A stretch of 30,537 nucleotides of DNA from Macrostomum lignano. Its lineage: Eukaryota. The stretch spans positions 1 to 30,537 of the forward strand of contig NIVC01004944.1 of the NCBI GenBank assembly GCA_002269645.1, read 5' to 3'. Every line of letters starts with the position of its first letter. The first letter of the stretch is position 1. The notes under the pieces were generated by a model that worked only from the letters and a program-made list of their open reading frames with translations, was not told the DNA's origin and ran no database searches. A program made the position numbers and the translations under genes. Shown piece by piece: positions 5,932 to 29,823 of this stretch.

Positions 5932-6980
5932 CAGCCGTGTCCCACTCGTGAGGCCATTCTATCCTCGGAAAACACGGCCTTGCAGCCCAGTAATGAATGC
6001 AGCGGTGTAGCGCTGCATGTATTTCTGGCTTTATTTTACGTTGTATTTAATACATTTGCGCACGTATGCACCAGCCGGTTCTATAAGCCACCGTGGGTGA
6101 TATTGGTAAACAAGTGTACAATTCAAATTGCATTTTAGCTAGCTATTAAAATAAGCCTGCCTATACATAAAATTTTACCACTTGCCAATTAGTTAGGCTT
6201 AGATTTATTTATTGCTCTTTAGACTTTGGAATCATTTAAAATTTACATAACTATATCCTATTTTTTGTTTAGCCTAGGCAAAATGCATATTTAATAAGCT
6301 TTCTAGGCTTCTAAAATCTAATAGCAATAGATAAAAACTACCTACCTAGTAATTTTTTACCTAATAGTAATACAAAGCCAAGCCTTCTATTTCAAATCAT
6401 TGATTATTTTCTACTATTGACTAGTAGGTCTAATTCTAAGTCTAAAATATTTTCTTTTCTTTTGTGTTATAAAGCCTTTATGCTATGTTAGAATATGTTT
6501 TTTAATGATAATAAGATTAAGAATCTTTTTTTTCTTTGGATCTAAAATTCATTTGGTCCTTCTTTAATTTAAGTAGCTTAGGCCTATCTTTTTATAAGAC
6601 CTAAGCCTAGCCTATGTTTATAATGTATTATATTAAAATGTTTTAATAATATTGTTTTATGGGAATCAAAAGTAGGAATATAACTATATAAGATAAAGCA
6701 TGCCTAAAATAAAACTCTTTTTGAAATAATTAGCCATAGTCTAATCAACTATAGACTAAGTAATAACTATTCATTGCCACTATATAAAGTCATGATATCC
6801 CTCTAGTTGTGACCTTTTCTTCCCCTCTAATGCTAGGCCTTACCTTTTTCTTTCTAGCCCATATTCTCTTCTCTAAAGCCTCACCTTCTTTTCCCTTCAG
6901 TATTACCCTCCTCCCCAGTCCCACAATGTTTTCCCATTAAATTCTTACCCTTTTTTCATAATCTCACCCTCTTACTCCTA

Positions 6981-9900
6981 CCCTCTAGCCCCACCTTCCT
7001 AGCCTCTAGTCCCACTATCCTTCCCTCCAGCCCCACCCTCCTTCCCTCTAGCCCCGCCCTCCCTTCCAGCTTCTACCCTTTTCTCTCCTCTAGACCCATC
7101 CCTTCTCTCCAGCCCCACCCCTTCCTTCCAGCCCCACCCATTCCCTCCAGCCCTACCTCTTCCCTCCAGCCCCTCCCCTTCCCTCCAGCCCCACCCCTTT
7201 CCTCTAGCCCCAACCCTCCCCTCCAGCTTCCACCCTCTTCTCCCCTCTAGCCCAACCCTCCTACCCTCTAGCCCCACCCTCCTTCCCTCCAGCCCCACCC
7301 TCCTCTCTAGCCCCACCCTCCTTCCCTCCAGCCCCACCCTCCTACCCTCTAGCCCCACCCTCCTTCCCTCCAGCCCCACCCTCCTACCCTCTAGCCCCAC
7401 CCTCCTTCCCTCCAGCCCCACCCTCCTACCCTCTAGCCCCTCTCCTTCCCTCCAGCCCCACCCTTTCCTCTAGCCCCAACCCTCCCCTCCAGCTTCCACC
7501 CTCTTCTCCCTCTAGCCCAACCCTCCTACCCTCTAGCCCCACCCTCCTACCCTCTAGCCCCACCCTCCTTCCCTCCAGCCCCACCCTCCTACTCTCTAGC
7601 CCCACCCTCCTTCCCTCCAGCCCCACCCTCTTCTCTTCTGTAGCCCCACCCCACCCCCTTCCCTCCAGCCCCACCCTCCTACCCTCTAGCCCTGCCCTCC
7701 CCTCCAGTTTCCAACCTCTTCTCCTTTCTAGCCCCACCCTCCCCTCCAGCTTCCACCCTCTTCTCCCCTCCAGCCCCACCCTCCTACCCTCCAGCCCCAC
7801 CCTCCCCTCCAGTTTCCAACCTCTTCTCCCCTCCAGCCTCACCCTCTTCTCCCCTCCAGCCCCACCCTCCTACCCTCTAGCCCCACCCTCCCCTCCAGCT
7901 TCCACCCTCTTCTCCCCTCCAGCCCCACCCTCCTTCCCTCCAGCCCCACCCTCCTACCCTCTAGCCCCACCCTCCTTCCCTCCAGCCCCACCCTCCTACC
8001 CTCTAGCCCCACCCTCCTTCCCTCCAGCCCCACCCTCCTACCCTCTAGCCCCTCTCCTTCCCTCCAGCCCACCCCTTTCCTCTAGCCCCAACCCTCCCCT
8101 CCAGCTTCCACCCTCTTCTCCCTCTAGCCCAACCCTCCTACCCTCTAGCCCCACCCTCCTTCCCTCCAGCCCCACCCTCCTCTCTAGCCCCACCCTCCTT
8201 CCCTCCAGCCCCACCCTCCTACCCTCTAGCCCCACCCTCCTTCCTCCAGCCCCACCCTCCTACCCTCTAGCCCCACCCTCCTTCCCTCCAGCCCCACCCT
8301 CCTACCCTCTAGCCCCTCTCCTTCCCTCCAGCCCCACCCCTTTCCTCTAGCCCCAACCCTCCCCTCCAGCTTCCACCCTCTTCTCCCTCTAGCCCAACCC
8401 TCCTACCCTCTAGCCCCACCCTCCTTCCCTCCAGCCCCACCCTCCTCTTTAGCCCCACCCTCCTTCCCTCCAGCCCCACCCTCCTACCCTCTAGCCCCAC
8501 CCTCCTTCCCTCCAGCCCCACCCTCCTACCCTCTAACCCCACCCTCCTTCCCTCCAGCCCACCCTCCTCTTTAGCCCCACCCTCCTTCCCTCCAGCCCAC
8601 CCTCCTACCCTCTAGCCCCACCCTCTTTCCCTCCAGCCCCACCCTCCTACCCTCTAACCCACCCTCCTTCCCTCCAGCCCCACCCTCCTACCCTCCAGCC
8701 CCACCTCCTACCCTCTAACCCCACCCTCCTTCCCTCCAGCCCCACCCTCCTACCCTCTAGCCCCACCCTCCTTCCCTCCAGCCGCACCCACTTCTCTTCT
8801 GTAGCCCCACCCCACCCCCTTCCCTCCAGCCCCACCCTCCTACCCTCTAGCCCTGCCCTCCCTTCCAGCTTCCACCCTCTTCTCCCCTCCAGCCCCACCC
8901 TCCTACCCTCTAGCCCCACCCTCCTACCCTCTAGCCCTGCCCTCCCTTCAAGCTTCCACCCTCTTCTCCCCTCCAGCCCCACCCTCCTACCCTCCAGCCC
9001 CACCCTCCTTCCCTCCAGCCCCACCCTCCTACCCTCTAGCCCCACCCTCTTTCCCTCCAGCCCCACCCTCCTACCTCTAACCCCACCCTCCTACCCTCTA
9101 ACCCCACCCTCCTTCCCTCCAGCCCCACCCTCCTACCTCCAGCCCCACCCTCCTACCCTCTTACCCCACCCTCCTTCCCTCCAGCCCCACCCTCCTACCC
9201 TCTAGCCCCACCCTCCTTCCCTCCAGCCGCACCCACTTCTCTTCTGTAGCCCCACCCCACCCCCTTCCCTCCAGCCCCACCCTCCTACCCTCTAGCCCTG
9301 CCCTCCCTTCCAGCTTCCACCCTCTTCTCCCTCCAGCCCCACCCTCCTACCCTCTAGCCCCACCCTCCTACCCTCTAGCCCTGCCCTCCCTTCAAGCTTC
9401 CACCCTCTTCTCCCCTCCAGCCCCACCCTCCTACCCTCCAGCCCCACCCTCCTACCCTCTAGCCCCACCCTCCTACCCTCTAGCCCTGCCCTCCCTTCCA
9501 GCTTCCACCCTCTTCTCCCCTCCAGCCCAACCTCCTACCCTCCAGCCCCACCCTCCTACCCTCTAGCCCCACCCTCCTACCCTCTAGCCCTGCCCTCCCT
9601 TCCAGCTTCCACCCTCTTCTCCCCTCCAGCCCCACCCTCCTACCCTCCAGCCCCACCCTCCTACCCTCTAGCCCTGCCCTCCCTTCCAGCTTCCACCCTC
9701 TTCTCCCCTCCAGCCCCACCCTCCTTCCCTCCAGCCCCACCCTCCTACCCTCTAGCCCCACCCTCCTTCCCTCCAGCCCCACCCTCCTACCCTCTAGCCC
9801 CACCCTCCTTCCCTCCAGCCCCACCCTCCTACTCTCTAGCCCCACCCTCCTTCCCTCCAGCCCCACCCTCTTCTCTTCTGTAGCCCCACCCCACCCCCTT

Positions 9901-12900
9901 CCCTCCAGCCCACCCTCCTACCCTCTAGCCCTGCCCTCCCTTCCAGCTTCCACCCTCTTCTCCCTCCAGCCTTACCCTCCTACCCTCCAGCCCCACCCTC
10001 CTACCCTCTAGCCCCACCCTCCTACCCTCTAGCCCTGCCCTCCCTTCCAGCTTCCACCCTCTTCTCCCCTCCAGCCCCACCCTCCTACCCTCCAGCCCCA
10101 CCCTCCTACCCTCTAGCCCCACCCTCCTACCCTCTAGCCCTGCCCTCCCTTCCAGCTTCCACCCTCTTCTCCCCTCCAGCCCACCCTCCTACCCTCTAGC
10201 CCCACCCTCCTACCCTCTAGCCCTGCCCTCCCTTCAAGCTTCCACCCTCTTCTCCCCTCCAGCCCCACCCTCCTACCCTCCAGCCCCACCCTCCTTCCCT
10301 CCAGCCCCACCCTCCTACCCTCTAGCCCCACCCTCTTTCCCTCCAGCCCCACCCTCCTACCCTCTAACCCCACCCTCCTACCCTCTAACCCCACCCTCCT
10401 TCCCTCCAGCCCCACCCTCCTACCCTCCAGCCCCACCCTCCTACCCTCTTACCCCACCCTCCTTCCCTCCAGCCCCACCCTCCTACCCTCTAGCCCCACC
10501 CTCCTTCCCTCCAGCCGCACCCACTTCTCTTCTGTAGCCCCACCCCACCCCTTCCCTCCAGCCCCACCCTCCTACCCTCTAGCCCTGCCCTCCCTTCCAG
10601 CTTCCACCCTCTTCTCCCCTCCAGCCCCACCCTCCTACCCTCTAGCCCCACCCTCCTACCCTCTAGCCCTGCCCTCCCTTCAAGCTTCCACCCTCTTCTC
10701 CCCTCCAGCCCCACCCTCCTACCCTCCAGCCCCACCCTCCTACCCTCTAGCCCCACCCTCCTACCCTCTAGCCCTGCCCTCCCTTCCAGCTTCCACCCTC
10801 TTCTCCCCTCCAGCCCCAACCTCCTACCCTCCAGCCCCACCCTCCTACCCTCTAGCCCCACCCTCCTACCCTCTAGCCCTGCCCTCCCTTCCAGCTTCCA
10901 CCCTCTTCTCCCCTCCAGCCCCACCCTCCTACCCTCCAGCCCACCCTCCTACCCTCCAGCCCCACCCTCCTACCCTCTAGCCCTGCCCTCCCTTCCAGCT
11001 TCCACCCTCTTCTCCCCTCCAGCCCCACCCTCCTTCCCTCCAGCCCCACCCTCCTACCCTCTAGCCCCACCCTCCTTCCCTCCAGCCCCACCCTCCTACC
11101 CTCTAGCCCCACCCTCCTTCCCTCCAGCCCCACCCTCCTACTCTCTAGCCCCACCCTCCTTCCCTCCAGCCCCACCCTCTTCTCTTCTGTAGCCCCACCC
11201 CACCCCCTTCCTCCAGCCCCACCCTCCTACCCTCTAGCCCTGCCCTCCCTTCCAGCTTCCACCCTCTTCTCCCCTCCAGCCTTACCCTCCTACCCTCCAG
11301 CCCCACCCTCCTACCCTCTAGCCCCACCCTCCTACCCTCTAGCCCTGCCCTCCCTTCCAGCTTCCACCCTCTTCTCCCCTCCAGCCCCACCCTCCTACCC
11401 TCCAGCCCCACCCTCCTACCCTCTAGCCCCACCCTCCTACCCTCTAGCCCTGCCCTCCCTTCCAGCTTCCACCCTCTTCTCCCCTCCAGCCCCACCCTCC
11501 TACCCTCCAGCCCCACCCTCCTACCCTCTAGCCCTGCCCTCCCTTCCAGCTTCCACCCTCTTCTCCCTCCAGCCCCACCCTCCTACCCTCCAGCCCCACC
11601 CTCCTACCCTCTAGCCCCACCCTCCCCTCCAGCTTCCACCCTCTTCTCCCCTCCAGCCCCACCCTCCTACTCTCCAGCCCCCCCCTCCTACCTTCTAGCC
11701 CCACCCTCCCCTCCAGTTTCCAACCTCTTCTCCTTTCTAGCCCCACCCTCCCCTCCAGTTTCCAACCTCTTCTCCCCTCCAGCCTCACCCTCTTCTCCCC
11801 TCCAGCCCCACCCTCCTACCCTCTAGCCCTACCCTCCCTTCCAACTTCCACCCTCTTCTCCCCTCCAGCCCCACCCCCTTCCCTCCAGCCCAACCCTCCT
11901 ACCCTCTAGCCCCACCCTCCTTCCCTCCAGCCCCACCCTCCTCTTTAGCCCCACCCTCCTTCCCTCCAGCCCCACCCTCCTACTCTCTAGCCCACCCTCC
12001 TTCCCTCCAGCCCCACCCTCCTACCCTCTAACCCCACCCTCCTTCCCTCCAGCCCCACCCTCCTACCCTCTAGCCCCACCCTCCTACCCTCTAGCCCCAC
12101 CCTCCTTCCCTCCAGCCGCACCCACTTCTCTTCTGTAGCCCCACCCCACCCCCTTCCCTCCAGCCCCACCCTCCTACCCTCTAGCCCTGCCCTCCCTTCC
12201 AGCTTCCACCCTCTTCTCCCCTCCAGCCCCACCCTCCTACCCTCTAGCCCTGCCCTCCCTTCCAGCTTCCACCCTCTTCTCCCCTCCAGCCCCACCCTCC
12301 TACCCTCCAGCCCCACCCTCCTACCCTCCAGCCCCACCCTCCTACCCTCTAGCCCTGCCCTCCCTTCCAGCTTCCACCCTCTTCTCCCCTCCAGCCCCAC
12401 CCTCCTTCCCTCCAGCCCCACCCTCCTACCCTCTAGCCCCACCCTCCTTCCCTCCAGCCCCACCCTCTTCTCTTCTGTAGCCCCACCCCACCCCCTTCCC
12501 TCCAGCCCCACCCTCCTACCCTCTAGCCCTGCCCTCCCTTCCAGCTTCCACCCTCTTCTCCCCTCCAGCCTTACCCTCATACCCTCCAGCCCCACCCTCC
12601 TACCCTCTAGCCCCACCCTCCTACCCTCTAGCCCTGCCCTCCCTTCCAGCTTCCACCCTCTTCTCCCCTCCAGCCCCACCCTCCTACCCTCCAGCCCCAC
12701 CCTCCTACCCTCTAGCCCCACCCTCCTACCCTCTAGCCCCACCCTCCTACCCTCTAGCCCTGCCCTCCCTTCCAGCTTCCACCCTCTTCTCCCCTCCAGC
12801 CCCACCCTCCTACCCTCCAGCCCCACCCTCCTACCCTCTAGCCCCACCCTCCCCTCCAGCTTCCACCCTCTTCTCCCCTCCAGCCCCACCCTCCTACCCT

Positions 12901-13335
12901 CCAGCCCCACCCTCCTACCCTCTAGCCCCACCCTCCCCTCCAGTTTCCAACCTCTTCTCCTTTCTAGCCCCACCCTCCCCTCCAGTTTCCAACCTCTTCT
13001 CCCCTCCAGCCTCACCCTCTTCTCCCCTCCAGCCCCACCCCCTTCCCTCCAGCCCCACCCTCCTACCCTCTAGCCCTGCCCTCCCTTCCAGCTTCCACCC
13101 TCTTCTCCCCTCCAGCCTTACCCTCCTACCCTCCAGCCCCACCCTCCTACCCTCTAGCCCTGCCCTCCCTTCCAGCTTCCAACCTCTTCTTCCCTCCAGC
13201 CTCACCCTCCTCCCCTCCAGACCCACCCCCTTCCCTCCAGCCCCACCCTCCTACCTTCTAGCCCCACCCTCCCCTCCAGCTTCCACCCTCTTCTCCCCTC
13301 CAGCCTCACCCTCTTCGCCCTTCTAGCCCCACCCT
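6981..13335 (+). repeat. 21-bp C/T-rich minisatellite (CCCTC(C/T)AGCCCCACCCTCCT(A/T)) with variant units, about 6.35 kb
   Basis: Seen directly; source of the spurious GLEGRRV ORFs on the minus strand. Confidence 0.97.
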
Positions 13336-13434
13336 ATTTTCCTATTCAGCCTCACCCTTTCTCGTAGCTCTGCTAATAAAATTTAATTATCCTTTTCAGA
13401 AGTGAAAAATAATATTTCTCTTTTCTCTCTTCAG

Positions 13435-14322
13435 AATGTCCTCGCACCGGTCTTGAGGTCATACCACGTGCCGGAGCGACTGGTCGCAGCAACCATAACT
13501 CTCTTCTAGGAGACCCTGGCCGCCGTGGTGACACCTGACGGACTATCCGACCTGTTCAAAACGACCTCAGGGATGCTGCAAGGCGACACGCTTGCGTCCA
13601 ACCGTTTCGTGTTGGTGCTCGATGGGGTGCTACGTAGGGCCCTGCCAAGGTGCTACGTAGGGCCCTGCCAACAGATGAGGACAGCTTCCTACTGTGCCGG
13701 CAAACAAGCAGCCGCCAATCGGAGAAGCGGCTGTCACTCATGGGTTACGCCGACGACCTGGCGCTGCCCGCCTCTACGGCTGAGGGAGCTCAGCGCATGC
13801 TAGACAGCCTGGTTGGTGGCAGCTGCGGCATCGGTCGGGCTAGCGGTGAACATCGAGAAGACGGAGGTGATGACTGTACCTGCGGAGCTGCCTATCAAAA
13901 TCACCTGCTGGGACACCCGACGGTCATGCAGCAGCTCTACCTCGCTGCGCGTGCTTCACGTACCCCGGCGATCTTGTGCCCAGTGTCCAGGAGGACTTGG
14001 CGCGACGCAGGGGCCTGGCCTGGGCGGCCTTCCGCTCCATCCGAGTCGTCCTGCAGAACGCCGCGCTGCCAGACTGCTGCGATCACCTAGCGAGACCCTC
14101 CGCAGGCGAAGACATCAGCTGGCGGGCCACACCATCCACGCGGAGGCCTACTGTTCTCAACCAGTGCAAGACGTCCTGCTGCTCACGATGCAGGGCCCCT
14201 GGCGCCGGGGCTACGGCCGGGCGAGTCGCGTCGCGGATTGCCTGTTGGATGGCGCTGGGGTGATTGGCCAGGCGCACGCTGTTGCCGCCTTTAGAGAGCT
14301 CGCACTGAGAGAACTGATCTGA
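13435..14322 (+). pseudogene. Non-LTR retrotransposon (RTE-like) RT fragment, left-arm copy
   Basis: VTPDG..GMLQGDTLA..FVLVLD, YADDLAL, GLAVNIEKTEVM and C-terminal RRRRHQLAGH; stop near 13508, 23-bp tandem duplication 13626-13671, frameshifts. Clade assignment is from recalled motifs. Confidence 0.85.
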
Positions 14323-14898
14323 CATTGCCTCCCATTGTGAACTGTTACTTTTAACTCAACAATACTGGGTGTGCCTTGTTATTTTCTCTTCAAAAAAATT
14401 TGCCTAGCTGCGAACTGTGATGGTGCATATCGCGTACTCGTGATTCAATAGCTTATACTTATTACTGTTTTACTTATTGCCTTCCGATGTCAATGCTATT
14501 TATTGCATGTAATATTATCGCAAAATTTAAGTTCGGGTGTCATTATTTAGCTACTGCCGCTGTTCTGCATTACAATTATTATAGTACTTCCTATCTACTG
14601 ACGTAACATTGTACCAAAAATTTTACATTGCGTGGCGCCAAAACCAATCTTGTTGAATGCTACTAGCGTAATAGCCGTTTGAATCGCTTGAAATACATTG
14701 TAATGCCATGCTGTATTGCTTTTGACGATCTAAACGACACTGGCTAGACTTCACTGATCCATATGCTCCTCAAGCAAGGTATATGGAAAGCAGATTGAGC
14801 AGCAAACTTAGTGTTTGATTGATAGAGATATTGTATAGTTGGATCTTTGGATCACGGATAGAACCAAGGAATCTAGATCTGGAGGCATGGAGGCATGC

Positions 14899-16137
14899 GG
14901 GGGGAGCCGCCGAAAGCAGCGGAGCTGTTGGGGGAGCGGCGGAAAGCAGCGGAGCTGTTGGGGGAGCGGCGGAAAGCAGCGGAGCTGTTGGGGGAGCGGC
15001 GGAAAGCAGCGGAGCTGTTGGGGGAGCGGCGGAAAGCAGCGGAGCTGTTGGGGGAGCGGCGGAAAGCAGCGGAGCTGTTGGGGAGCGGCGGAAAGCAGCG
15101 GAGCTGTTGGGGGAGCGGCGGAAAGCAGCGGAGCTGTTGGGGGAGCGGCGGAAAGCAGCGGAGCTGTTGGGGGAGCGGCGGAAAGCAGCGGAGCTGTTGG
15201 GGGGAGCGGCGGAAAGCAGCGGAGCTGTTGGGGGAGCGGCGGAAAGCAGCGGAGCTGTTGGGGGAGCGGCGGAAAGAAGCGGAGCTATTGGTGGAAGTGG
15301 CGGAAAGCAGCGGAGCTGTTGGGGAGCGGCGGAAAGCAGCGGAGCTGTTGGGGAGCGGCGGAAAGCAGCGGAGCTGTTGGGGGAGCGGCGGAAAGCAGCG
15401 GAGCTGTTGGGGGAGCGGCGGAAAGCAGCGGAGCTGTTGGGGGAGCAGCGGAAAGCAGCGGAGCTGTTGGGGGAGCGGCGGAAAGCAGCGGAGCTGTTGG
15501 GGGAGCGGCGGCAAGCAGCGGAGCTGTTGGGGGGAGCGGCGGAAAGCAGCGGAGCTGTTGGGGGAGCGGCGGAAAGAAGCGGAGCTATTGGTGGAAGTGG
15601 CGGAAAGCAGCGGAGCTGTTGGGGAGCGGCGGAAAGCAGCGGAGCTGTTGGGGGGGGAGCGGCGGAAAGAAGCGGAGCTATTGGTGGAAGTGGCGGAAAG
15701 CAGCGGAGCTGTTGGGGAGCGGCGGAAAGCAGCGGAGCTGTTGGGGGAGCGGCGGAAAGCAGCGGAGCTGTTGGGGGGGGAGCGGCGGAAAGCAGCGGAG
15801 CTGTTGGGGGAGCAGCGGAGCTGTTGGGGGGAGCGGCGGAAAGCAGCGGAGCTGTTGGGGGAGCGGCGGAAAGAAGCGGAGCTATTGGTGGAAGTGGCGG
15901 AAAGCAGCGGAGCTGTTGGGGGAGCGGCGGAAAGCAGCGGAGCTGTTGGGGGGGGGGAGCGGCGGAAAGAAGCGGAGCTATTGGTGGAAGTGGCGGAAAG
16001 CAGCGGAGCTGTTGGGGAGCGGCGGAAAGCAGCGGAGCTGTTGGGGGAGCGGCGGAAAGCAGCGGAGCTGTTGGGGGGGGAGCGGCGGAAAGCAGCGGAG
16101 CTGTTGGGGGAGCGGCGGAAAGCAGCGGAGCTGTTGG
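14899..16137 (+). repeat. 30-bp G-rich minisatellite (GGGGGAGCGGCGGAAAGCAGCGGAGCTGTT), about 41 units
   Basis: Seen directly; G-run length varies; recurring variant AAGAAGCGGAGCTATTGGTGGAAGTGG. Confidence 0.97.
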
Positions 16138-16588: not shown

Positions 16589-16790
16589 TGATATGTATGC
16601 CTTTTAGTACGAACTATGTCTATGGGCAAGCCTGCGAGCTGAAGTTGAGCTGGATTAAAAGAGAGACAGTTCGCTAAGTTAGACGCTAACGTGCGAGAAA
16701 TACACACGGCGTAAAAGCCAGAGCCTTGAGCTGACTAAACTTCTAAGTTGCTTTACTTAGTGACTACGTGATTTGTGCAAAGACGTAACA
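16589..16790 (+). repeat. 5' LTR of gypsy element 2
   Basis: Matches 20909-21110 with 2 substitutions (16628 A/G, 16673 G/T). Confidence 0.97.
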
Positions 16791-16791
16791 A

Positions 16792-19800: not shown

Positions 19801-20858
19801 CACCAGAATCTGCTGTTCACCCGTTGAGTTGGCCAGAAAAGCCATGGACGAGACTTCAGGCAGATTTTTTCGGACCGTGTTTCGGATTCAATTGGTTGGT
19901 AATCGTGGATGCCACATCAAAATGGGTAGAGGTTTTTCCAATGAAAGTTGCCAGTGCCGCGAACACCATTCAACGCTTTCGAGAGACATTTGCTCGGTTT
20001 GGAATACCTCGACAGATACTGACCGACAATGGAAGCCAGTTTGCATCACAGGAGTTTGCTGAATTCACCAAGCGAAATAACATCCATCACATCTTCAGTG
20101 CTGTAGGACATCCAAGAACCAACGGGCTCAGTGAGCGAATGGTTCAAACAGCCAAGAATGTGATCAGAGCAGGCATGAAGAGCCACGGTGATGCCATGCT
20201 GAGCCTGCACAATTTCCTATTCCGCTATAGAAGCACGCCTCATAGCACAACTGGCAAGTCACCTGCCGAGATGATGCTTGCGTATGCAAGACGGACAAGG
20301 CTGGACTTCCTGAAGCCAGACACATACGGGAGAGTCCTGGATTCGCAAAGTAAGCAGATGATGCGCCGGGAACATATTCCTCACCGAGAGTTTCAGGCTG
20401 GAGATATAGTGCTAGCTCTTGATTTCAGGAGGGAAAAAGAAAACAAGTGGGCTCAAGCCAAAGTGTTGAAACAGACTGGGCCGCTGTCCTACCACGTGGA
20501 AGTCAACGGACAAATCTGGAAACGACACGTGGATCATCTGATCAAATCTGAAACCGAAGTTGTGCCCCAGCCACAGTGTGATTTCGACACAGAACTAACG
20601 CAAGCACACAATGCCAAGAATAGCTACAAGTTGAAAAAGGATGCAAAAGAGGAAGCTGAATCGACGGGACCAAATCTAGAGCATCATGGTCAGACTGGCA
20701 AGTCTTCGCGGGCCATAGACAAAACTCGAAAGTTAGCCGCGTCATCAAGCTTCGATATCAAGCCAAAGGACGGCCAAGATGTGAAACAGCATCCGAACCA
20801 ACGTGTTTTGCGTGACCGGTCAAAACTGAAGAAACCGGATTTTTTTGTTGCGAATTAA
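16803..20858 (+). CDS. gag-pol: Single-frame Gag-Pol polyprotein with one in-frame TGA at 16842-16844
   Basis: Two CCHC knuckles (CYRCHGTDHWAKSC, CSKCSKQGHHERAC); PR IDTGAD, LLGRDWL; RT ICADFK, LDISQAF, CIDD; RNase H TDASKYG, EKEAL, TDHKPL, NADALSR; integrase HEGH..CKGC, TDNGSQF, GLSERMV. ATG 16803 (and 16791) is in frame with the track ORF that starts at TTG 16872. Confidence 0.95.
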
Positions 20859-20893
20859 CTGAACTGAACTGTTTTGACTGAACAATTTTTTTT

Positions 20894-20908
20894 AAAGAAA
20901 AGGAGGAA
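20894..20908 (+). other. Polypurine tract of gypsy element 2
   Basis: AAAGAAAAGGAGGAA immediately before the 3' LTR. Confidence 0.9.
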
Positions 20909-21110
20909 TGATATGTATGCCTTTTAGTACGAACTATGTCTATGGGCGAGCCTGCGAGCTGAAGTTGAGCTGGATTAAAAGAGAGACAGTTCTCTAAGTT
21001 AGACGCTAACGTGCGAGAAATACACACGGCGTAAAAGCCAGAGCCTTGAGCTGACTAAACTTCTAAGTTGCTTTACTTAGTGACTACGTGATTTGTGCAA
21101 AGACGTAACA
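20909..21110 (+). repeat. 3' LTR of gypsy element 2
   Basis: Direct repeat of 16589-16790, followed by CTGCC. Confidence 0.97.
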
Positions 21111-21528
21111 CTGCCGCAATTTGACTGGGGACTATGAACTCTAAACATTGGCACCTCAAGATTAGAGCGGCGGCACTCGAACCAAAATAATGTTGAAGGA
21201 CTACAGAATACATGTATATCATAGAATAGAGAGAAGCTAGTTCATTTAGATATTTTTTTAATCTCAATCCCCAATTTTCATTTTCATTTTCATTTCTAAA
21301 TCTCAATCCCCGATTGTTAATTCCCTTATATCCCTGATTCCTAATGTTGAAATCCGAATCCAGCTTGTTGATATCCCTCAGAGGGGAATGATGAGGGGAT
21401 GCTTCTGAGGACCGAGTTGCTGCTTTAGCTATACATGTATACATCTAAATATGATCCTGTTAGGAGTAGAGTAGAAATATGCGAGAGCAGAGAGGAGACA
21501 GAAAATAGTAGGGGAAGTTAAGGGGATA

Positions 21529-21911
21529 CCCTAGAGGACATTCTGTTTCTCAAACTTAGCAGATCTTGTCTCTGTGCCATTCTTAGCAGATCTTCTCAAT
21601 CTGCTCGGTTCTTGCAGGATCTTCTAAGATGGGAGGTACATTTGCTTTGTAATTCATTTGGCTAAAGTGTTCTAGCTGAACTATATTTATTTTATGACAA
21701 AAAGGAACAATAAATTTAAGAAAATATGCGATTCGAAGCTATAAAAGGATATAAAAGCTAAGCTCTTGTACGATGTAGCAAGTCGCCCAGATCTAGGTTT
21801 ACCTAAGTATTATTATAGCGAAGATCTTGCACGTTCTTGCAAGTACTTGCGCAGCAACCCAGGAAGATAGACAAGATCTGCTAAGAATCAACAAGTCAAT
21901 GTCTTCTAGGG
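21529..21911. mobile_element. 383-bp MITE-like element with CCC...GGG ends, flanked by TA
   Basis: TA|CCCTAGAGGACATT ... AATGTCTTCTAGGG|TA (13/14 inverted match); internal inverted motif CTTAGCAGATCTTGTC / GACAAGATCTGCTAAG. Confidence 0.7.
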
Positions 21912-22091
21912 TATAGGGCATTGGCAACTTTTACGAGAAACTTGTATAAGACTGGTCGGGTCAGGTATCATATTCTTAAGTTGAATATGACGTAAGTTAG
22001 AACTGGGGCACCTTTTACGAAATGTTTGAAAGCTGCCATGCAGCTACATGTATACAAGATCATAGAACAGAGCGAAGCTAGCTCATTTAGC

Positions 22092-24229
22092 CCAACCTCA
22101 AGAGCCAGAATTCCGAGTGGCAGTCGAAAAATTCTGCCCAGCCACTGAGACCATCAGTTCTGCGGCGCGCCAAGGGAGCCGACAAACTGATGATCATCGC
22201 ATCCCGGCGGTAAAAATCACGTCGAAATGACGTCGAAAAGCGACGTCGAAATTTCATGTCGATTTGAACCACGATTTCGACGTCGAAATTTTCGCCATCA
22301 GATGTCGAGTATGCGACGTCGTGTTTTCCACTATTGATGGCGAAAAATCGACGTCGTTTATACTCGTCGATCACAGAAAGTAAATGGCGATTTTCGACAA
22401 ATTTTCGATTTTAATATTATGGCTATTAATACTAGTACTTAATATTATTAATATGCTAGTGCAATGTTTCATACAATTAGCCATAAACTACATGTACGTA
22501 ACTTACAGCTGACGGAACATAAGTTTTATAACTCATACGCTGAAATACTCTAAGCAGTAAAAGAAGTGTTAAGGCATAAAAATGCTAATTAGGGCTGACG
22601 TTTCATTTGCTATCCGCGCAAATTGCAATAATCTTGCAACCATGAAAAAAGTATAGTACCGTGTATTCAATTCCAATTCAGCAGCAATTGGAAACGATCA
22701 TGGAAATCGGCATCCAGCAATTGCTAACAGAAAGCAACGATGAGAAAAAAACGATGAAAAACTGTGAGCAATGATACACGGATACACGCAATGGCAACAG
22801 AGTATACATTTAATACAGTAGTTACACTTAATCAATGGCAACATCTAAAATAATAAATGCACCTATACTAAATCTCTAATCTCAAAATATATATACTAAA
22901 AATGGTCTGCTCTGATATACTAAACTACATACATCTACAAACACAAACTACAACTTCTTTACTTTCTGCAATTTTGACCTTGATAAAGAACTAGCAAAAG
23001 CATGAAATAATGGACAAAAGATGATATTGAGTCTAACTAGAACTACACTCAAAAATGTAAAATGTGAAATAAAAAATGAGAAGTAACAATAACAGCAAAG
23101 CAAATAAAAGAGGAAAATGAACAATTATCTTTGTTGTTCCTCTTGACTGGAAAGATAATTAACAGCAATGGCAGCAAAACAAACAATAAAAAAAATTATG
23201 GCTACTTTATTGATTCGCTTATACATAAATAAACGATTAAAACTCTAGGCAGCAATATTGTGTTAAACCAAATTATAGCTACACACAATTTATGACACAC
23301 AATCACACATTAATACAGCGACAAATATAAAAAATGCATTGAAAGGAAGAAGCTGCCATGCGTAATACAGAAGTATAAGTTAAACATTTATGTATATAAG
23401 TTAGGCATCAAAAATAATAAATCGACATCGCATGGCGATATTTTTAAAAAATGCGCGTATCTAGCGCTGAGTTAAAACAAAAATATAACCTCTGTTGTAC
23501 TGAATTTTTAGGTCAATTTTGTAAACTCGCAATCACGTTAAAGAAAACATTGTAAAATATCATAAATGATATATTTGGCAAATGAGAAGATAAAATAATT
23601 CATATCGAAATTTCGACGTCGAATGAAGGTTCAACCGACAACTAATTCGGCGATAGTCTTTAAAAGGCGAATATCGACGTCATTTCGACGTGGTTTTTAC
23701 CGCCGGGATGCTACGACAGTTTTGGCATTATTCTCATCCAACGCATTTCTGAGGGCCAAAACATCAACCAAAAGTTTTATCGGAGCTTCCCCACCCACCA
23801 TCTTCGGCCTGCCTGGCGCAAAAAGCGGCCAGACCCTGGAACTTGGTCCACTCCTTCCGCACGACAATGCCAGTTCGCACACAGCCCGCATTGTGCAGGA
23901 CCTACTGCGGGACTATCAGTGGGAGGTGCTGCCTCATCCTACTTACTCCCTAGACCTCAGTCCCTGCGATTTCAGCCTTTCCCAAAGCTTAAGAACCAGC
24001 TTCAAGGGTATTCAAGGGAACCAGCATCCAGGCAGCGAGATCGGCCGCATTGCAAAAGACCTGTGCGAATCTGGCGCTGCTGACAGCGTCCACAAGTTGC
24101 CTGGCTGCTGGTAGCGCATGATTCAAACCAACGGAAGTTATTTTGAAGGTTTTTGAGCTGTTCACTGTTCTGAAACTCGTTTGTTGAAAATTAATAAGTG
24201 TTTAATGAAACTTTTGAGATGACCCTCGG
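22092..24229 (+). pseudogene. 5'-truncated mariner (D,D34D) transposase remnant with right TIR, split by a MITE
   Basis: KSQNSEW..KLMIIA|CYDSFGIILI..GQNINQKFY, LPHDNASSH..PHPTYSLDLSPCDF (34 residues between the two Asp), KLPGCW*RMIQTNGSYFEG; right end ...AAACTTTTGAGATGACCCTCGG|TA. First catalytic Asp and left TIR not found. Confidence 0.88.
22203..23707. mobile_element. 1505-bp non-autonomous TIR element (CCC...GGG, 2-bp TSD AT), CMC/EnSpm-like
   Basis: AT|CCCGGCGGTAAAAATCACGTCGAAATGACGTCGA ... TCGACGTCATTTCGACGTGGTTTTTACCGCCGGG|AT; clustered (C)GACGTCG motifs near both ends; AT-rich noncoding interior; removal restores the mariner frame. Confidence 0.85.
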
Positions 24230-24935
24230 TATAGATGGAAGAATATATTTAATGCCCTCAAGCCTGCTATATGTACACTGTACATTCAGAAGTTACGTGC
24301 TCTTTTAGCATGGTATTAGATACTGTACATGTAACATTGATACATTGAGTGTAAGATGCGTTACATGTACGTATCTATATATACAGCATGTATTCTGTAG
24401 TCCTTCAACATTATTTTGGTTCGAGTGCCGCCGCTCTAATCTTGAGGTGCCAATGTTTAGAGTTCATAGTCCCCAGTCAAATTGCGGCAGTCACTTGTCG
24501 AAGGCCCCAAGGCCAAGACCCTAGGCCCCTAAATACCATGCAGGATGTTGGGGACTGAGAGTCCCCTCTCGCGACATTAAATAATTAGTAAATGATCGGA
24601 GGCTGAGCCTTACGGGCATGAATTCAAGGTAGTAGAGCACCGGCCGGGTCACACACACGTAGCCCTAGTAACATTTAAACCGTCACCAATTCGCCACTCA
24701 AATACATGTAGTACACTGTAATAAATGAGCCGTACCTTTTTGTAATCCAGTTTGCCAAAACAATATGCATACGTACATGTAGAACCAACTTCGGGCACTT
24801 CAGGCACTGCGAGTTCACTCGATTCAGTTGAAGGGTAGGCAGAGGCAGAGAGCCAGCATTCTGCCTTAAACTGACTGACTGAATTCATTCTCATAGCATC
24901 GCTCTATGCAAATAAGCCTGTCAGCTGTTATCAAA

Positions 24936-25699
24936 CCAACAGCTCCGCTGCTTTCCGCCGCTCCCCCAACAGCTCCGCTGCTTTCCGCCGCTCCCCCCCC
25001 CAACAGCTCCGCTGCTTTCCGCCGCTCCCCAACAGCTCCGCTGCTTTCCGCCGCTCCCCAACAGCTCCGCTGCTTTCCGCCACTTCCACCAATAGCTCCG
25101 CTTCTTTCCGCCGCTCCCCCCAACAGCTCCGCTGCTTTCCGCCGCTCCCCCAACAGCTCCGCTGCTTTCCGCCGCTCCCCCCCCCAACAGCTCCGCTGCT
25201 TTCCGCCGCTCCCCAACAGCTCCGCTGCTTTCCGCCGCTCCCCAACAGCTCCGCTGCTTTCCGCCACTTCCACCAATAGCTCCGCTTCTTTCCACCGCTC
25301 CCCCCCCAACAGCTCCGCTGCTTTCCGCCGCTCCCCCAACAGCTCCGCTGCTTTCCGCCGCTCCCCAACAGCTCCGCTGCTTTCCGCCGCTCCCCCAACA
25401 GCTCCGCTGCTTTCCGCCGCTCCCCCAACAGCTCCGCTGCTTTCCGCCGCTCCCCAACAGCTCCGCTGCTTTCCGCCACTTCCACCAATAGCTCCGCTTC
25501 TTTCCGCCGCTCCCCCAACAGCTCCGCTGCTTTCCGCCGCTCCCCCAACAGCTCCGCTGCTTTCCGCCGCTCCCCCAACAGCTCCGCTGCTTTCCGCCGC
25601 TCCCCCCAACAGCTCCGCTGCTTTCCGCCGCTCCCCCAACAGCTCCGCTGCTTTCCGCCGCTCCCCCCAACAGCTCCGCTGCTTTCGGCGGCTCCCCCC
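24936..25699 (-). repeat. 30-bp minisatellite, right-arm copy, about 25 units
   Basis: Reverse complement of the 14899-16137 unit. Confidence 0.97.
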
Positions 25700-26278
25700 G
25701 CATGCCTCCATGCCTCCAGATCTAGATTCCTTGGTTCTATCCGTGATCCAAAGATCCAACTATACAATATCTCTATCAATCAAACACTAAGTTTGCTGCT
25801 CAATCTGCTTTCCATATACCTTGCTTGAGGAGCATATGGATCAGTGAAGTCTAGCCAGTGTCGTTTAGATCGTCAAAAGCAATACTGCATGGCATTACAA
25901 TGTATTTCAAGCGATTCAAACGGCTATTACGCTAGTAGCATTCAACAAGATTGGTTTTGGCGCCACGCAATGTAAAATTTTTGGTACAATGTTACGTCAG
26001 TAGATAGGAAGTACTATAATAATTGTAATGCAGAACAGCGGCAGTAGCTAAATAATGACACCCGAACTTAAATTTTGCGATAATATTACATGCAATAAAT
26101 AGCATTGACATCGGAAGGCAATAAGTAAAACAGTAATAAGTATAAGCTATTGAATCGCGAGTACGCGATATGCACCATCACAGTTCGCAGCTAGGCAAAT
26201 TTTTTTGAAGAGAAAATAACAACAAGGCACACCCAGTATTGTTGAGTTAAAAGTAACAGTTCACAATGGGAGGCAATG

Positions 26279-27164
26279 TCAGATCAGTTCTCTCAGTGCG
26301 AGCTCTCTAAAGGCGGCAACAGCGTGCGCCTGGCCAATCACCCCAGCGCCATCCAACAGGCAATCCGCGACGCGACTCGCCCGGCCGTAGCCCCGGCGCC
26401 AGGGGCCCTGCATCGTGAGCAGCAGGACGTCTTGCACTGGTTGAGAACAGTAGGCCTCCGCGTGGATGGTGTGGCCCGCCAGCTGATGTCTTCGCCTGCG
26501 GAGGGTCTCGCTAGGTGATCGCAGCAGTCTGGCAGCGCGGCGTTCTGCAGGACGACTCGGATGGAGCGGAAGGCCGCCCAGGCCAGGCCCCTGCGTCGCG
26601 CCAAGTCCTCCTGGACACTGGGCACAAGATCGCCGGGGTACGTGAAGCACGCGCAGCGAGGTAGAGCTGCTGCATGACCGTCGGTGTCCCAGCAGGTGAT
26701 TTTGATAGGCAGCTCCGCAGGTACAGTCATCACCTCCGTCTTCTCGATGTTCACCGCTAGCCCGACCGATGCCGCAGCTGCCACCAACCAGGCTGTCTAG
26801 CATGCGCTGAGCTCCCTCAGCCCCAGAGAGCGGGCAGCGCCAGGTCGTCGGCGTAACCCATGAGTGACAGCCGCTTCTCCGATTGGCGGCTGCTTGTTTG
26901 CCGGCACAGTAGGAAGCTGTCCTCATCTGTTGGCAGGGCCCTACGTAGCACCTTGGCAGGGCCTACGTAGCACCCATCGAGCACCAACACGAAACGGTTG
27001 GACGCAAGCGTGTCGCCTTGCAGCATCCCTGAGGTCGTTTTGAACAGGTCGGATAGTCCGTCAGGTGTCACCACGGCGGCCAGGGTCTCCTAGAAGAGAG
27101 TTATGGTTGCTGCGACCAGTCGCTCCGGCACGTGGTATGACCTCAAGACCGGTGCGAGGACATT
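26279..27164 (-). pseudogene. RTE-like RT fragment, right-arm copy
   Basis: Reverse complement of 13435-14322, with the same stop and tandem duplication. Confidence 0.85.
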
Positions 27165-27264
27165 CTGAAGAGAGAAAAGAGAAATATTATTTTTCACTTC
27201 TGAAAAGGATAATTAAATTTTATTAGCAGAGCTACGAGAAAGGGTGAGGCTGAATAGGAAAATA

Positions 27265-28850
27265 GGGTGGGGCTAGAAGGGCGAAGAGGGTGAGGCTGGA
27301 GGGGAGAAGAGGGTGGAAGCTGGAGGGGAGGGTGGGGCTAGAAGGTAGGAGGGTGGGGCTGGAGGGAAGGGGTGGGTCTGGAGGGAGGAGGGTGAGGCTG
27401 GAGGGAAGAAGAGGTTGGAAGCTGGAAGGGAGGGCAGGGCTAGAGGGTAGGAGGGTGGGGCTAGAGGGTAGGAGGGTGGGGCTGGAGGGTAGGAGGGTAA
27501 GGCTGGAGGGAGAAGAGGGTGGAAGCTGGAAGGGAGGGCAGGGCTAGAGGGTAGGAGGGTGGGGCTGGAGGGAAGGGGTGGGGCTGGAGGGGAGAAGAGG
27601 GTGAGGCTGGAGGGGAGAAGAGGTTGGAAACTGGAGGGGAGGGTGGGGCTAGAAAGGAGAAGAGGTTGGAAACTGGAGGGGAGGGTGGGGCTAGAGGGTA
27701 GGAGGGTTGGCTAGAGGGGAGAAGAGGGTGGAAGCTGGAGGGGAGTGTTGGGGCTAGAGGAAAGGGGTGGGGCTGGAGGGAAGGAGAGGGGCTAGAGGGT
27801 AGGAGGGTGGGGCTGGAGGGAAGGAGGGTGGGGCTAGAGGGTAGGAGGGTGGGGCTGGAGGGAAGGAGGGTGGGGCTAGAGGGTAGGAGGGTGGGGCTGG
27901 AGGGAAGGAGGGTGGGGCTGGAGGGGAGAAGAGGGTGGAAGCTGGAGGGAGGGTGGGGCTAGAGGGTAGGAGGGTGGGGCTGGAGGGAGAAGAGGGTGAG
28001 GCTGGAGGGGAGAAGAGGTTGGAAACTGGAGGGGAGGTGGGGCTGGAGGTAGGAGGGTGGGGCTGGAGGGAGAAGAGGGTGGAAGCTGGAGGGGAGGGTG
28101 GGGCTAGAAAGGAGAAGAGGTTGGAAACTGGAGGGGAGGGCAGGGCTAGAGGGTAGGAGGGTGGGGCTGGAGGGAAGGGGGTGGGGTGGGGCTACAGAAG
28201 AGGGTGGGGCTGGAGGGAAAGAGGGTGGGGCTAGAGAGTAGGAGGGTGGGGCTGGAGGGAAGGAGGGTGGGGCTAGAGGGTAGGAGGGTGGGGCTAGAGG
28301 GTAGGAGGGTTGGGCTAGAGGGGAGAAGAGGGTGGAAGCTGGAGGGGAGGGTTGGGGCTAGAGGAAAGGGGTGGGGCTGGAGGGAAGGAGAGGGGCTAGA
28401 GGGTAGGAGGGTGGGGCTGGAGGGAAGGAGGGTGGGGCTAGAGGGTAGGAGGGTGGGGCTGGAGGGAAGGAGGGTGGGGCTAGAGGGTAGGAGGGTGGGG
28501 CTGGAGGGAAGGAGGGTGGGGCTAGAGAGGAGGGTGGGGCTGGAGGGAAGGAGGGTGGGCTAGAGGGTAGGAGGGTTGGGCTAGAGGGGAGAAGAGGGTG
28601 GAAGCTGGAGGGGAGGGTTGGGGCTAGAGGAAAGGGGTGGGGCTGGAGGGAAGGGGAGGGGCTGGAGGGAAGAGATAGGGCTGGAGGGAATGGGTGGGGC
28701 TGGAAGGAAGGGGTGGGGCTGGAGAGAAGGGATGGGTCTAGAGGAGAGAAAAGGGTGGAAGCTGGAAGGGAGGGCGGGGCTAGAGGGAAGGAGGGTGGGG
28801 CTGGAGGGAAGGATAGTGGGACTAGAGGCTAGGAAGGTGGGCTAGAGGGT
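27265..28850 (-). repeat. 21-bp minisatellite, right-arm copy, about 1.6 kb
   Basis: Reverse complement of the 6981-13335 units. Confidence 0.97.
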
Positions 28851-29823
28851 AGGAGTAAGAGGGTGAGATTATGAAAAAAGGGTAAGAATTTAATGGAAAA
28901 CATTGTGGGAGGAGGTAATACTGAAGGGAAAAGAAGGTGAGGCTTTAGAGAAGAGAATATGGGCTAGAAAGAAAAAGGTAAGGCCTAGCATTAGAGGGGA
29001 AGAAAAGGTCACAACTAGAGGGATATCATGACTTTATATAGTGGCAATGAATAGTTATTACTTAGTCTATAGTTGATTAGACTATGGCTAATTATTTCAA
29101 AAAGATTTTTATTTTATTTTTAGGCATGCTTTATCTTATATAGTTATATTCCTACTTTTGATTTCCATAAAACAATATTATTAAAACATTTTAATATAAT
29201 ACATTATAAACATAGGCTAGGCTTAGGTCTTATAAAAAGATAGGCCTAAGCTACTTAAATTAAAGAAGGACCAAATGAATTTTAGATCCAAAGAAAAAAA
29301 AAGATTCTTAATCTTATTATCATTAAAAAACATATTCTAACATAGCATAAAGGCTTTATAACACAAAAGAAGGCTTGGCTTTGTATTACTATTAGGTAAA
29401 AAATTACTAGGTAGGTAGTTTTTATCTATTGCTATTAGATTTTAGAAGCCTAGAAAGCTTATTAAATATGCATTTTGCCTAGGCTAAACAAAAAATAGGA
29501 TATAGTTATGTAAATTTTAAATGATTCCAAAGTCTAAAGAGCAATAAATAAATCTAAGCCTAACTAATTGGCAAGTGGTAAAATTTTATGTATAGGCAGG
29601 CTTATTTTAATAGCTAGCTAAAATGCAATTTGAATTGTACACTTGTTTACCAATATCACCCACGGTGGCTTATAGAACCGGCTGGTGCATACGTGCGCAA
29701 ATGTATTAAATACAACGTAAAATAAAGCCAGAAATACATGCAGCGCTACACCGCTGCATTCATTACTGGGCTGCAAGGCCGTGTTTTCCGAGGATAGAAT
29801 GCCTCACGAGTGGGACACGGCTG

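What the first reader, a model, noticed from the sequence alone, without database searches (positions are those of the whole stretch)
5932..29823. 24-kb fold-back element with 5-11 kb inverted arms and an exact 7-bp target-site duplication
Seen: inverted identity starts precisely at 5932/29823, and a non-palindromic direct repeat GACCTTA sits on both outer flanks. Inversion alone cannot produce it, and an exact 7-mer at a fixed position is about 1 in 16,000 under uniform base composition. Arms are 5.4 kb (right) and about 10.8 kb (left, gypsy removed). Established: long TIRs with internal tandem repeats plus 7-bp TSDs characterise Galileo (P superfamily), whose arms are only about 1 kb; hAT elements often start CAG but make 8-bp TSDs. 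Inference: the whole unit was inserted by a transposase as one piece, and it may represent an uncharacterised family of giant fold-back elements.
Basis: partly seen in the sequence, partly recalled or inferred. Interest (0 to 1): 0.88.

Follow-up and report, generated by a model that had tools for sequence, protein, structure and literature searches.

The report
Long-armed fold-back transposon insertion
A 24-kb stretch of an animal genome is a non-coding "fold-back" mobile element: two long mirror-image arms, mostly satellite repeats and dead transposon pieces, that inserted at a precise site. It is unusually large for its kind but not a new kind.

Summary
The inverted identity starts exactly at 5932 and 29823, with the same 22 nt at both ends. 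An exact direct GACCTTA lies on both outer flanks, about 1 in 18,000 by chance.

- **Arms:** the left arm is 5932-16588 plus 21111-21225 (10.77 kb). The right arm is 24374-29823 (5.45 kb). The spacer between them is 3.1 kb.
- **Arm similarity:** the arms are colinear and differ by 0.29% in unique sequence.
- **Arm length difference:** it comes almost entirely from one ~4.7-kb block of extra 21-bp repeats and 0.5 kb of extra 30-bp repeats.
- **Later insertion:** a young gypsy element (16589-21110, its own 5-bp duplication CTGCC) entered the left arm afterwards.
- **Content:** both arms carry the same non-LTR reverse-transcriptase fragment. The spacer holds only a mariner remnant and small inverted-repeat debris. 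No transposase is present.

Best reading: a non-autonomous fold-back-type DNA transposon moved in trans by an enzyme that makes 7-bp staggered cuts.

The unit that integrated was not today's 24 kb. No second copy could be found, so "a new family" is untested. Galileo copies with 4.2-4.7-kb arms are already published, so this is a large new member of a known kind.

The parts
5925..5931 (.). Left copy of the 7-bp target-site duplication GACCTTA
   Evidence: Read directly. Chance of a match at the fixed position is 5.5e-5.
29824..29830 (.). Right copy of the 7-bp target-site duplication GACCTTA
   Evidence: Read directly.
5932..16588 (+). Left arm, outer part. It starts with the terminus CAGCCGTGTCCCACTCGTGAGG and runs up to the gypsy insertion point.
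   Evidence: Self-BLAST on the minus strand and the terminus search.
21111..21225 (+). Left arm, innermost 115 bp, separated from the rest of the arm by the nested gypsy
   Evidence: Pairs with 24374-24490 with 0 mismatches.
24374..29823 (-). Right arm (5,450 bp), colinear with the left arm
   Evidence: There are 9 substitutions in 3,086 aligned unique positions (0.29%).
5932..6974 (+). AT-rich (32% GC) unique terminal segment of the left arm; its mirror is 28856-29823. Two subterminal hairpin palindromes lie at 5934-5978 and 5984-6030. A 72-bp indel between the arms lies at 6385-6456.
   Evidence: Alignment A1, segment comparison, k-mer excess, fold z = -3.65.
6975..13335 (+). 21-bp C-rich satellite array of the left arm, about 303 units, GC skew -0.84
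   Evidence: TRF and composition profile. It equals the right array plus about 4.7 kb of internal extra repeats.
27264..28855 (-). 21-bp satellite array of the right arm, about 77 units
   Evidence: TRF. Its outer 1,185 bp are 97-99% identical and colinear with the start of the left array.
13438..14074 (+). Frameshifted fragment of a non-LTR retrotransposon reverse transcriptase in the left arm, with the motifs GMLQGD and YADD
   Evidence: Pfam RVT_1 E = 1.2e-9 on a manually frame-stitched translation. Aligns to Bombyx R2 reverse transcriptase residues 543-668. Coordinates.
26527..27161 (-). Mirror copy of the same reverse-transcriptase fragment in the right arm
   Evidence: The same peptides are found on the minus strand.
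14900..16137 (+). 30-bp G-rich satellite array of the left arm, about 41 units
   Evidence: TRF.
24936..25698 (-). 30-bp satellite array of the right arm, about 25 units
   Evidence: TRF.
16589..21110 (+). Nested Ty3/gypsy LTR retrotransposon, a later insertion that is not part of the fold-back unit. LTRs lie at 16589-16790 and 20909-21110 (2 mismatches in 202 bp, TG..CA ends). It has a 5-bp duplication CTGCC and one 1,328-aa ORF at 16872-20858.
   Evidence: LTR pair; duplication and the empty site in the right arm; protease, RT, RNase H and integrase domains.
21226..24373 (.). Asymmetric AT-rich spacer (3,148 bp) with no transposase
   Evidence: Six-frame Pfam scan found nothing. Six-frame search against PDB sequences found only a mariner remnant. 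Small inverted-repeat debris is present.
23836..24153 (+). C-terminal remnant of a mariner transposase inside the spacer, equivalent to Mos1 residues about 245-345. It is 5'-truncated and not able to act on this element's ends.
   Evidence: phmmer against PDB, E = 5e-11 and 1.4e-11. Coordinates.

Best explanation
This is a non-autonomous fold-back-type class II (cut-and-paste) transposon.

- Inferred mechanism: a transposase encoded elsewhere recognised the two identical ends (5'-CAGCCGTG...), excised or copied the unit, and integrated it at a 7-bp staggered cut. Repair of that cut produced the GACCTTA duplication. The element probably already carried multi-kb arms when it landed.
- Origin of the arms: as in long-armed Galileo copies, the arms were built by tandem-repeat amplification and by copying internal or foreign sequence from one arm to the other. 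Here the foreign sequence is a non-LTR reverse-transcriptase fragment.
- Changes after insertion: one arm gained or the other lost about 4.7 kb of 21-bp repeats and 0.5 kb of 30-bp repeats. A 72-bp microhomology-bounded indel arose. A gypsy element inserted into the left arm.
- By analogy only: the satellite arrays may supply extra transposase-binding sites.
- Shown versus inferred: the termini, the duplication, the arm colinearity, the later gypsy insertion and the absence of coding capacity are shown. Transposase mediation, the superfamily (a 7-bp duplication points to P-like) and the size at insertion are inferred.
For: - Exact 22-nt identical inverted termini abut an exact 7-bp direct repeat. 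The chance of that repeat is 5.5e-5.
- The flanks are otherwise unrelated to each other.
- The anatomy matches published fold-back elements: outer unique domain, tandem sub-repeats, inner domain and a non-coding middle (PMC4079207).
- Arm divergence is 0.29%.
- The same reverse-transcriptase fragment sits at mirror positions in both arms.
- The arrays are unequal through a single internal block.
- All of these traits are documented in the extended-arm Galileo copy 112: 4.2- and 4.7-kb arms, 7-bp duplication, unequal repeats, and P and Mar fragments in both arms (PMC4168063).
- Two Galileo copies share one extended-arm structure but have different duplications, which shows that extended-arm copies can transpose as such.
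- The first 100 nt of the terminus forms two palindromic hairpins (z = -3.65). They lie at roughly the distance from the end where the P and Galileo THAP sites lie (PMC3688188).
Against: - Only one copy is available, and no transposase or remnant of one matching these ends is present.
- No match to the terminus or the satellites was found in any searchable collection.
- The arms are a patchwork of satellite and retrotransposon debris, as in a low-copy palindromic duplication (PMC1952172).
- The arms exceed any published fold-back or Galileo arm that I could find, and long elements transpose poorly (PMC3688188).
- The target GACCTTA does not resemble Galileo's GTANTAC preference.
Confidence: 0.5

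Rival explanations
1. A much shorter inverted-repeat element inserted and made the 7-bp duplication. The multi-kb arms then grew where they sit, by copying sequence from one arm to the other (hairpin-templated repair or arm-to-arm gene conversion) and by satellite amplification. On this reading no giant unit was ever mobilised.
For: - Arm extension by recruitment of internal sequence and by tandem-repeat expansion is documented for Galileo (PMC3573991; PMC4168063).
- The reverse-transcriptase fragment in both arms shows that arm-to-arm copying happened at some stage.
- Arm divergence (0.29%) is no higher than that of the gypsy LTRs (2 of 202). This is compatible with continuing homogenisation, but not significant (P about 0.12).
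- The arrays are demonstrably unstable.
Against: - More than 5 kb would have to be mirrored in place without disturbing the exact termini.
- Nothing in the sequence dates arm growth relative to insertion.
- Extended-arm Galileo copies are known to re-insert.
Confidence: 0.25
2. This is a one-off palindromic low-copy repeat, an inverted segmental duplication assembled in a transposon graveyard. It was excised and re-integrated by double-strand-break repair at a staggered break, with no dedicated transposase. The model is the 14.6-kb module at the Anopheles gambiae 2Rj inversion breakpoints.
For: - The dimensions are very similar. Here the shorter arm state gives 5.45-kb arms and a 3.15-kb spacer, about 14.05 kb in all. 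The mosquito module has 5.3-kb arms, a 4-kb spacer, arms more than 99% identical, no coding capacity, fragments of class I and II elements, and a putative 8-bp flanking duplication (PMC1952172).
- The spacer and arms here are likewise debris: a reverse-transcriptase fragment, a mariner remnant and MITE-like pieces.
Against: - Unlike the mosquito module, this element has large terminal blocks of sub-repeats, clean CAG...CTG termini and an exact direct duplication.
- Break repair rarely gives a precise 7-bp duplication abutting perfectly symmetrical ends.
Confidence: 0.17
3. The 7-mer is a coincidence, and the structure is an inverted duplication formed in place by replication template switching or fold-back priming.
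For: Only one instance is seen, so chance cannot be excluded formally.
Against: - The probability of the 7-mer match is 5.5e-5.
- Template switching would continue into the reverse complement of the left flank, not into a direct copy of it.
- The flanks show no complementarity.
Confidence: 0.04
4. This is an assembly or long-read fold-back chimera artefact.
For: Palindromes and long satellite arrays are error-prone in assemblies. The array lengths in particular could be wrong.
Against: - Unique flanks lie on both sides.
- The spacer is 3.1 kb and asymmetric.
- One arm carries a gypsy insertion with its own 5-bp duplication, while the other arm preserves the empty site.
- The arms differ by scattered substitutions and indels.
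- None of these features is expected from a chimeric read.
Confidence: 0.04

Closest known systems
Extended-arm non-autonomous Galileo copies (P superfamily), especially D. willistoni copy 112 (PMC4168063)
   Same: - 7-bp target duplication.
- No transposase.
- Multi-kb arms (4,246 and 4,680 bp) that contain tandem repeats in different numbers in the two arms.
- Fragments of unrelated transposons mirrored in both arms.
- AT-rich segments.
- Insertion in AT-rich DNA.
   Different: - The arms here are 5.45 and 10.77 kb, and the arrays are far larger (77 and 303 units of 21 bp).
- The spacer is 3.1 kb.
- The host is probably not an insect: the best relative of the nested gypsy is from the flatworm Macrostomum lignano at 60% identity.
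- The target GACCTTA does not fit GTANTAC.
- No sequence or transposase link to Galileo could be tested.
Drosophila Foldback (FB), Tetris and other Mutator-type fold-back elements (PMC4079207)
   Same: - Modular arms with an outer domain, tandem repeats and an inner domain.
- A variable non-coding middle domain.
- Non-autonomous copies.
- A link between arm repeats and satellite DNA.
   Different: Those elements make 8-10-bp duplications (Tetris) and are assigned to Mutator; here the duplication is 7 bp. Their reported arms are about 1-2 kb at most according to PMC1952172.
The 14.6-kb inverted-repeat module at the Anopheles gambiae 2Rj inversion breakpoints (PMC1952172)
   Same: - About 5.3-kb arms that are more than 99% identical.
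- A kb-scale spacer.
- No coding capacity.
- A patchwork of degraded class I and II elements.
- A possible short flanking duplication.
   Different: The mosquito module lacks terminal sub-repeat blocks and a clean direct duplication, and its authors judged it a segmental duplication rather than a transposon. The element here has both features.

Membership tests
Fold-back-like DNA transposons (structural class) | Long terminal inverted arms make up most of the element | tested here: met
   The arms are 10.77 and 5.45 kb of a 19.4-kb unit once the gypsy is removed.
Fold-back-like DNA transposons (structural class) | Tandem sub-repeats inside the arms | tested here: met
   21-bp and 30-bp arrays are present in both arms.
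Fold-back-like DNA transposons (structural class) | Flanking target-site duplication | tested here: met
   GACCTTA lies on both flanks.
Fold-back-like DNA transposons (structural class) | Multiple dispersed copies sharing the same termini | not testable with these tools
   The source genome is not available. There is no second terminus in the window and there are no matches in metagenome or viral contigs or in the protein collection.
P superfamily / Galileo | 7- or 8-bp target-site duplication | tested here: met
   Exactly 7 bp; an 8-bp reading fails in both directions.
P superfamily / Galileo | THAP-domain P-type transposase in autonomous copies of the family | not testable with these tools
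   This copy has none. Six-frame Pfam and PDB-sequence searches of the spacer found only a mariner remnant. Non-autonomous Galileo copies also lack it, so absence here does not decide membership.
P superfamily / Galileo | Conserved ~40-bp Galileo terminal sequence | not tested
   No Galileo reference sequence was on hand.
P superfamily / Galileo | Target preference GTANTAC within a 15-bp palindromic motif | tested here: inconclusive
   GACCTTA matches 2 of the 6 specified positions. A single site cannot test a preference.
hAT superfamily | 8-bp target-site duplication | tested here: not met
   The duplication is 7 bp.
hAT superfamily | Termini of the YARNG type (from my own knowledge of hAT ends) | tested here: inconclusive
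   The end reads CAGCC. The first four positions fit and the fifth does not.
Mutator-type fold-back elements (FB, Tetris) | 8-10-bp target-site duplication | tested here: not met
   7 bp here; Tetris makes 8-10 bp.
Dada superfamily | 6-7-bp duplication with insertion into small-RNA genes (from my own knowledge) | tested here: not met
   The duplication length fits, but no Rfam family or tRNA gene is found anywhere in the window.
Palindromic low-copy repeat (An. gambiae 2Rj type) | Multi-kb arms more than 99% identical, kb-scale spacer, transposon-debris content, no coding capacity | tested here: met
   compared.
Palindromic low-copy repeat (An. gambiae 2Rj type) | No terminal sub-repeat blocks and no clean direct target duplication | tested here: not met
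   Both features are present here.

The most novel reading that the evidence does not exclude
The element is one copy of a recently active, undescribed family of very large fold-back transposons with a 7-bp duplication, hence probably P-like. The family would live in a non-insect animal, possibly a flatworm, and its transposase would be able to move palindromic units of 14 kb or more. Its arms would seed 21- and 30-bp satellite DNA.
Probability: 0.3. Interest if true: 0.6.

Novelty: new member of a known kind. Interest (0 to 1): 0.4.

Why it matters
- **Genome instability.** Long-armed fold-back elements are strong sources of instability. Galileo, Tetris/DAIBAM and the mosquito 2Rj module are all tied to chromosomal inversions, and long close inverted repeats stimulate recombination and deletion.
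- **Annotation and assembly.** A precisely bounded example with a clean target duplication marks a likely rearrangement hotspot. It also marks a region that is hard to assemble and annotate.
- **Satellite dynamics.** The element shows how satellite arrays and retrotransposon debris become part of mobile inverted repeats.
- **If more copies exist.** If the source genome holds more copies, or an autonomous partner, it would extend the known size range of transposable palindromic DNA. It would also place a Galileo-like life style outside Drosophila.

Tried and rejected
- **Other copies through protein space.** I searched with the pseudo-ORF that covers the terminal 200 bp and found no hit.
- **Exact-sequence look-ups.** Look-ups of an arm ORF and of the mariner ORF found nothing on record.
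- **Source species.** It seems absent from the protein collection. The young, intact gypsy has no relative above 60% identity. I therefore did not spend the last protein search or the representative search on the arms.
- **Transposase in the spacer.** The six-frame Pfam scan found nothing and also missed the real mariner remnant, so its sensitivity was poor. The six-frame PDB-sequence search found the mariner remnant only.
- **Sub-terminal binding motifs.** There is only a modest excess of AAGCCT and CTAGGC (z about 5), which is not convincing.
- **Insertion into a small-RNA gene (Dada-like).** Rejected: no Rfam or tRNA hit.
- **Left satellite as four copies of the right one.** Rejected: the right array matches the two edges of the left array, with one internal extra block.
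- **Right-flank ORF.** An ORF at 30141-30341 looked like a retrotransposon C-terminus by eye but gave no Pfam hit, so I make no claim for it.
Full report
**1. Observation**

The sequence reads ...tatatatGACCTTA|CAGCCGTGTCCCACTCGTGAGG... on the left and ...CCTCACGAGTGGGACACGGCTG|GACCTTAaagc... on the right. The 22-nt terminus occurs only at 5932-5953 (+) and 29802-29823 (-), and never in shuffled sequence. Complementarity stops exactly there, and the duplication cannot be read as 8 bp in either direction. With the AT-rich flank composition, a 7-mer match at that fixed position has probability 5.5e-5.

**2. Anatomy**

Self-comparison gives these parts:
- **Left arm:** 5932-16588 plus 21111-21225 (10,772 bp).
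- **Right arm:** 24374-29823 (5,450 bp).
- **Spacer:** 21226-24373, asymmetric (3,148 bp).

Read from each end inward, the arms have the same order of modules:
- A 1-kb AT-rich unique segment (32% GC).
- A 21-bp C-rich satellite, with 303 units on the left and 77 on the right (GC skew -0.84).
- A 1.56-kb unique segment containing a frameshifted non-LTR reverse-transcriptase fragment. Pfam RVT_1 gives E = 1.2e-9 on a manually stitched translation. The fragment aligns to Bombyx R2 reverse transcriptase residues 543-668. It lies at 13438-14074 (+) and 26527-27161 (-).
- A 30-bp G-rich satellite, with 41 units on the left and 25 on the right.
- A 0.57-kb inner unique segment.

In unique sequence the arms differ by 9 substitutions in 3,086 positions (0.29%) plus a few indels. 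One of these is a 72-bp indel bounded by a TTCT microhomology.

The size difference between the arms is not diffuse. The outer 1,185 bp of the right 21-bp array is colinear with the start of the left array at 97-99% identity. Its inner 400 bp matches the end of the left array. The left array therefore carries one extra internal block of about 4.7 kb, or the right array lost it.

**3. Events after the arms were formed**

A Ty3/gypsy element occupies 16589-21110.
- It has 202-bp LTRs with TG..CA ends and 2 mismatches between them.
- It has a single 1,328-aa ORF with protease, reverse transcriptase, RNase H and integrase domains.
- It has a 5-bp duplication CTGCC.

The right arm keeps the uninterrupted target ...GTGACTGCCGCAATTTG.... 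The gypsy therefore entered after the arms were duplicated.

Without the gypsy the unit is 19.4 kb. With the shorter array state on both sides it would be about 14.05 kb, and with the longer state about 24.7 kb. So the present 24 kb was not what integrated.

**4. Coding capacity**

- The spacer gave no Pfam hit in six frames.
- Searched in six frames against all PDB sequences, it gave only a 5'-truncated mariner remnant. This corresponds to Mos1 residues about 245-345 and lies at 23836-24153.
- The spacer also holds a MITE-like piece (21526-21914) and a 58-nt inverted-repeat pair (22194-22251 and 23659-23716).
- No RNA gene is present anywhere in the window.

The element is non-autonomous.

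**5. What it most likely is**

A direct duplication abutting exact inverted termini is the signature of integration at a staggered cut.
- Inversion or template switching would continue into the reverse complement of the flank, not into a direct copy of it.
- The module order matches published fold-back elements: outer domain, tandem repeats, inner domain, non-coding middle (PMC4079207).
- The specific oddities here are unequal repeat numbers in the two arms and a foreign transposon fragment mirrored in both arms. Both are described for extended-arm Galileo copies, which also make 7-bp duplications (PMC3573991; PMC4168063).
- Galileo copy 112 has arms of 4,246 and 4,680 bp. Copies 145 and 147 share an extended-arm structure but have different duplications, so extended arms can be transposed.
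- In Galileo the transposase's THAP domain binds about 70 bp from the end and again inside the tandem repeats (PMC3688188).
- Here the first 100 nt form two palindromic hairpins (z = -3.65), and the arrays could play the same role. That part is analogy, not evidence.

I put 0.5 on "a fold-back-type transposon that landed with long arms". I put 0.25 on "a short element that landed and grew its arms in place". The two cannot be separated with one copy.

**6. Rivals**

- **Palindromic low-copy repeat.** The closest non-transposon precedent is the 14.6-kb module at the Anopheles gambiae 2Rj breakpoints. It has 5.3-kb arms, a 4-kb spacer, transposon-graveyard content and a putative 8-bp duplication. 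Its authors called it a segmental duplication because it lacked sub-repeats, a clean duplication and other copies (PMC1952172). The present element has the first two features, and the third is untestable. I give this reading 0.17.
- **Chance 7-mer plus duplication in place.** About 0.04.
- **Assembly artefact.** About 0.04. The asymmetric spacer, the single-arm gypsy with its own duplication and the scattered arm differences are not what a chimeric read produces.

**7. Superfamily**

- A 7-bp duplication fits P/Galileo and does not fit hAT (8 bp) or Mutator-type fold-backs (8-10 bp).
- Dada makes 6-7-bp duplications but targets small-RNA genes, and none is present here.
- The CAG start is hAT-like only in its first bases.
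- The target GACCTTA does not match Galileo's GTANTAC, but one site cannot test a preference.

Membership in any superfamily remains open. The element works like a Galileo-type fold-back, but I do not file it as Galileo.

The nested gypsy's best relative is a Macrostomum lignano protein at 60% identity, and the next hits are at or below 47%. The source is therefore an animal, perhaps a flatworm, and it is evidently not represented in the protein collection. No copy of the terminus or of either satellite was found in metagenome or viral contigs or through protein space. The claim that this is a family is untested.

**9. Verdict**

- The feature is real and precisely bounded, and it is unusually large.
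- It is a new, unclassified member of a known kind, namely fold-back or extended-arm DNA transposons.
- The "one piece" and "giant new family" inferences go beyond the evidence, and the "about 1 kb" limit for Galileo arms is outdated.
- Interest is 0.4.

Noticed in passing
window 1-5017: This is a second, older Ty3/gypsy element cut by the window start. It has about 60% GC, and its pol is split over several frames (RNase H 2881-3483, integrase 3483-5017). A 24-bp tandem repeat lies at 1628-1884. Its integrase is only 28% identical to that of the nested gypsy, so it belongs to a different family.
   Followed up: partly
window 16589-21110: The nested gypsy looks recently active. It has one uninterrupted 1,328-aa ORF, 202-bp LTRs with 2 differences and an intact 5-bp duplication. 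Its closest relative in the protein collection is from Macrostomum lignano at 60% identity, which is the only clue to the host.
   Followed up: partly
window 23836-24153: A 5'-truncated mariner transposase remnant, the last ~100 residues by alignment to Mos1, lies about 220 bp from the inner edge of the right arm.
   Followed up: yes
window 22194-22251 and 23659-23716: A 58-nt inverted-repeat pair (83% complementary) encloses 1.4 kb of AT-rich DNA, with clusters of GACGTCGAAA-like motifs next to each arm. I saw no flanking duplication. It may be the ends of another small inverted-repeat element.
   Followed up: no
window 21526-21914: A MITE-like unit of about 390 bp with 53-nt imperfect inverted ends (ATACCCTAGAGGAC...) lies inside the spacer.
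   Followed up: no
window 5934-5978 and 5984-6030 (mirrored at the right end): Two local palindromes lie in the first 100 nt of each terminus: GCCGTGT...ACACGGC, and ATGCAGCG-6 nt-CGCTGCAT within a longer stem. The fold z-score is -3.65. They are candidate protein-binding sites, by position only.
   Followed up: partly
window 6975-13335: The 21-bp satellite is extremely strand-asymmetric (GC skew -0.84), and its G-rich strand carries runs of 3-4 G. Self-alignment of the left array suggests higher-order periodicities of about 590-650 and 1,220 bp.
   Followed up: partly
window 6385-6456: A 72-bp segment is present in the left arm and absent from the right. It is bounded by a TTCT microhomology, which is consistent with a slippage or end-joining deletion in one arm.
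   Followed up: partly
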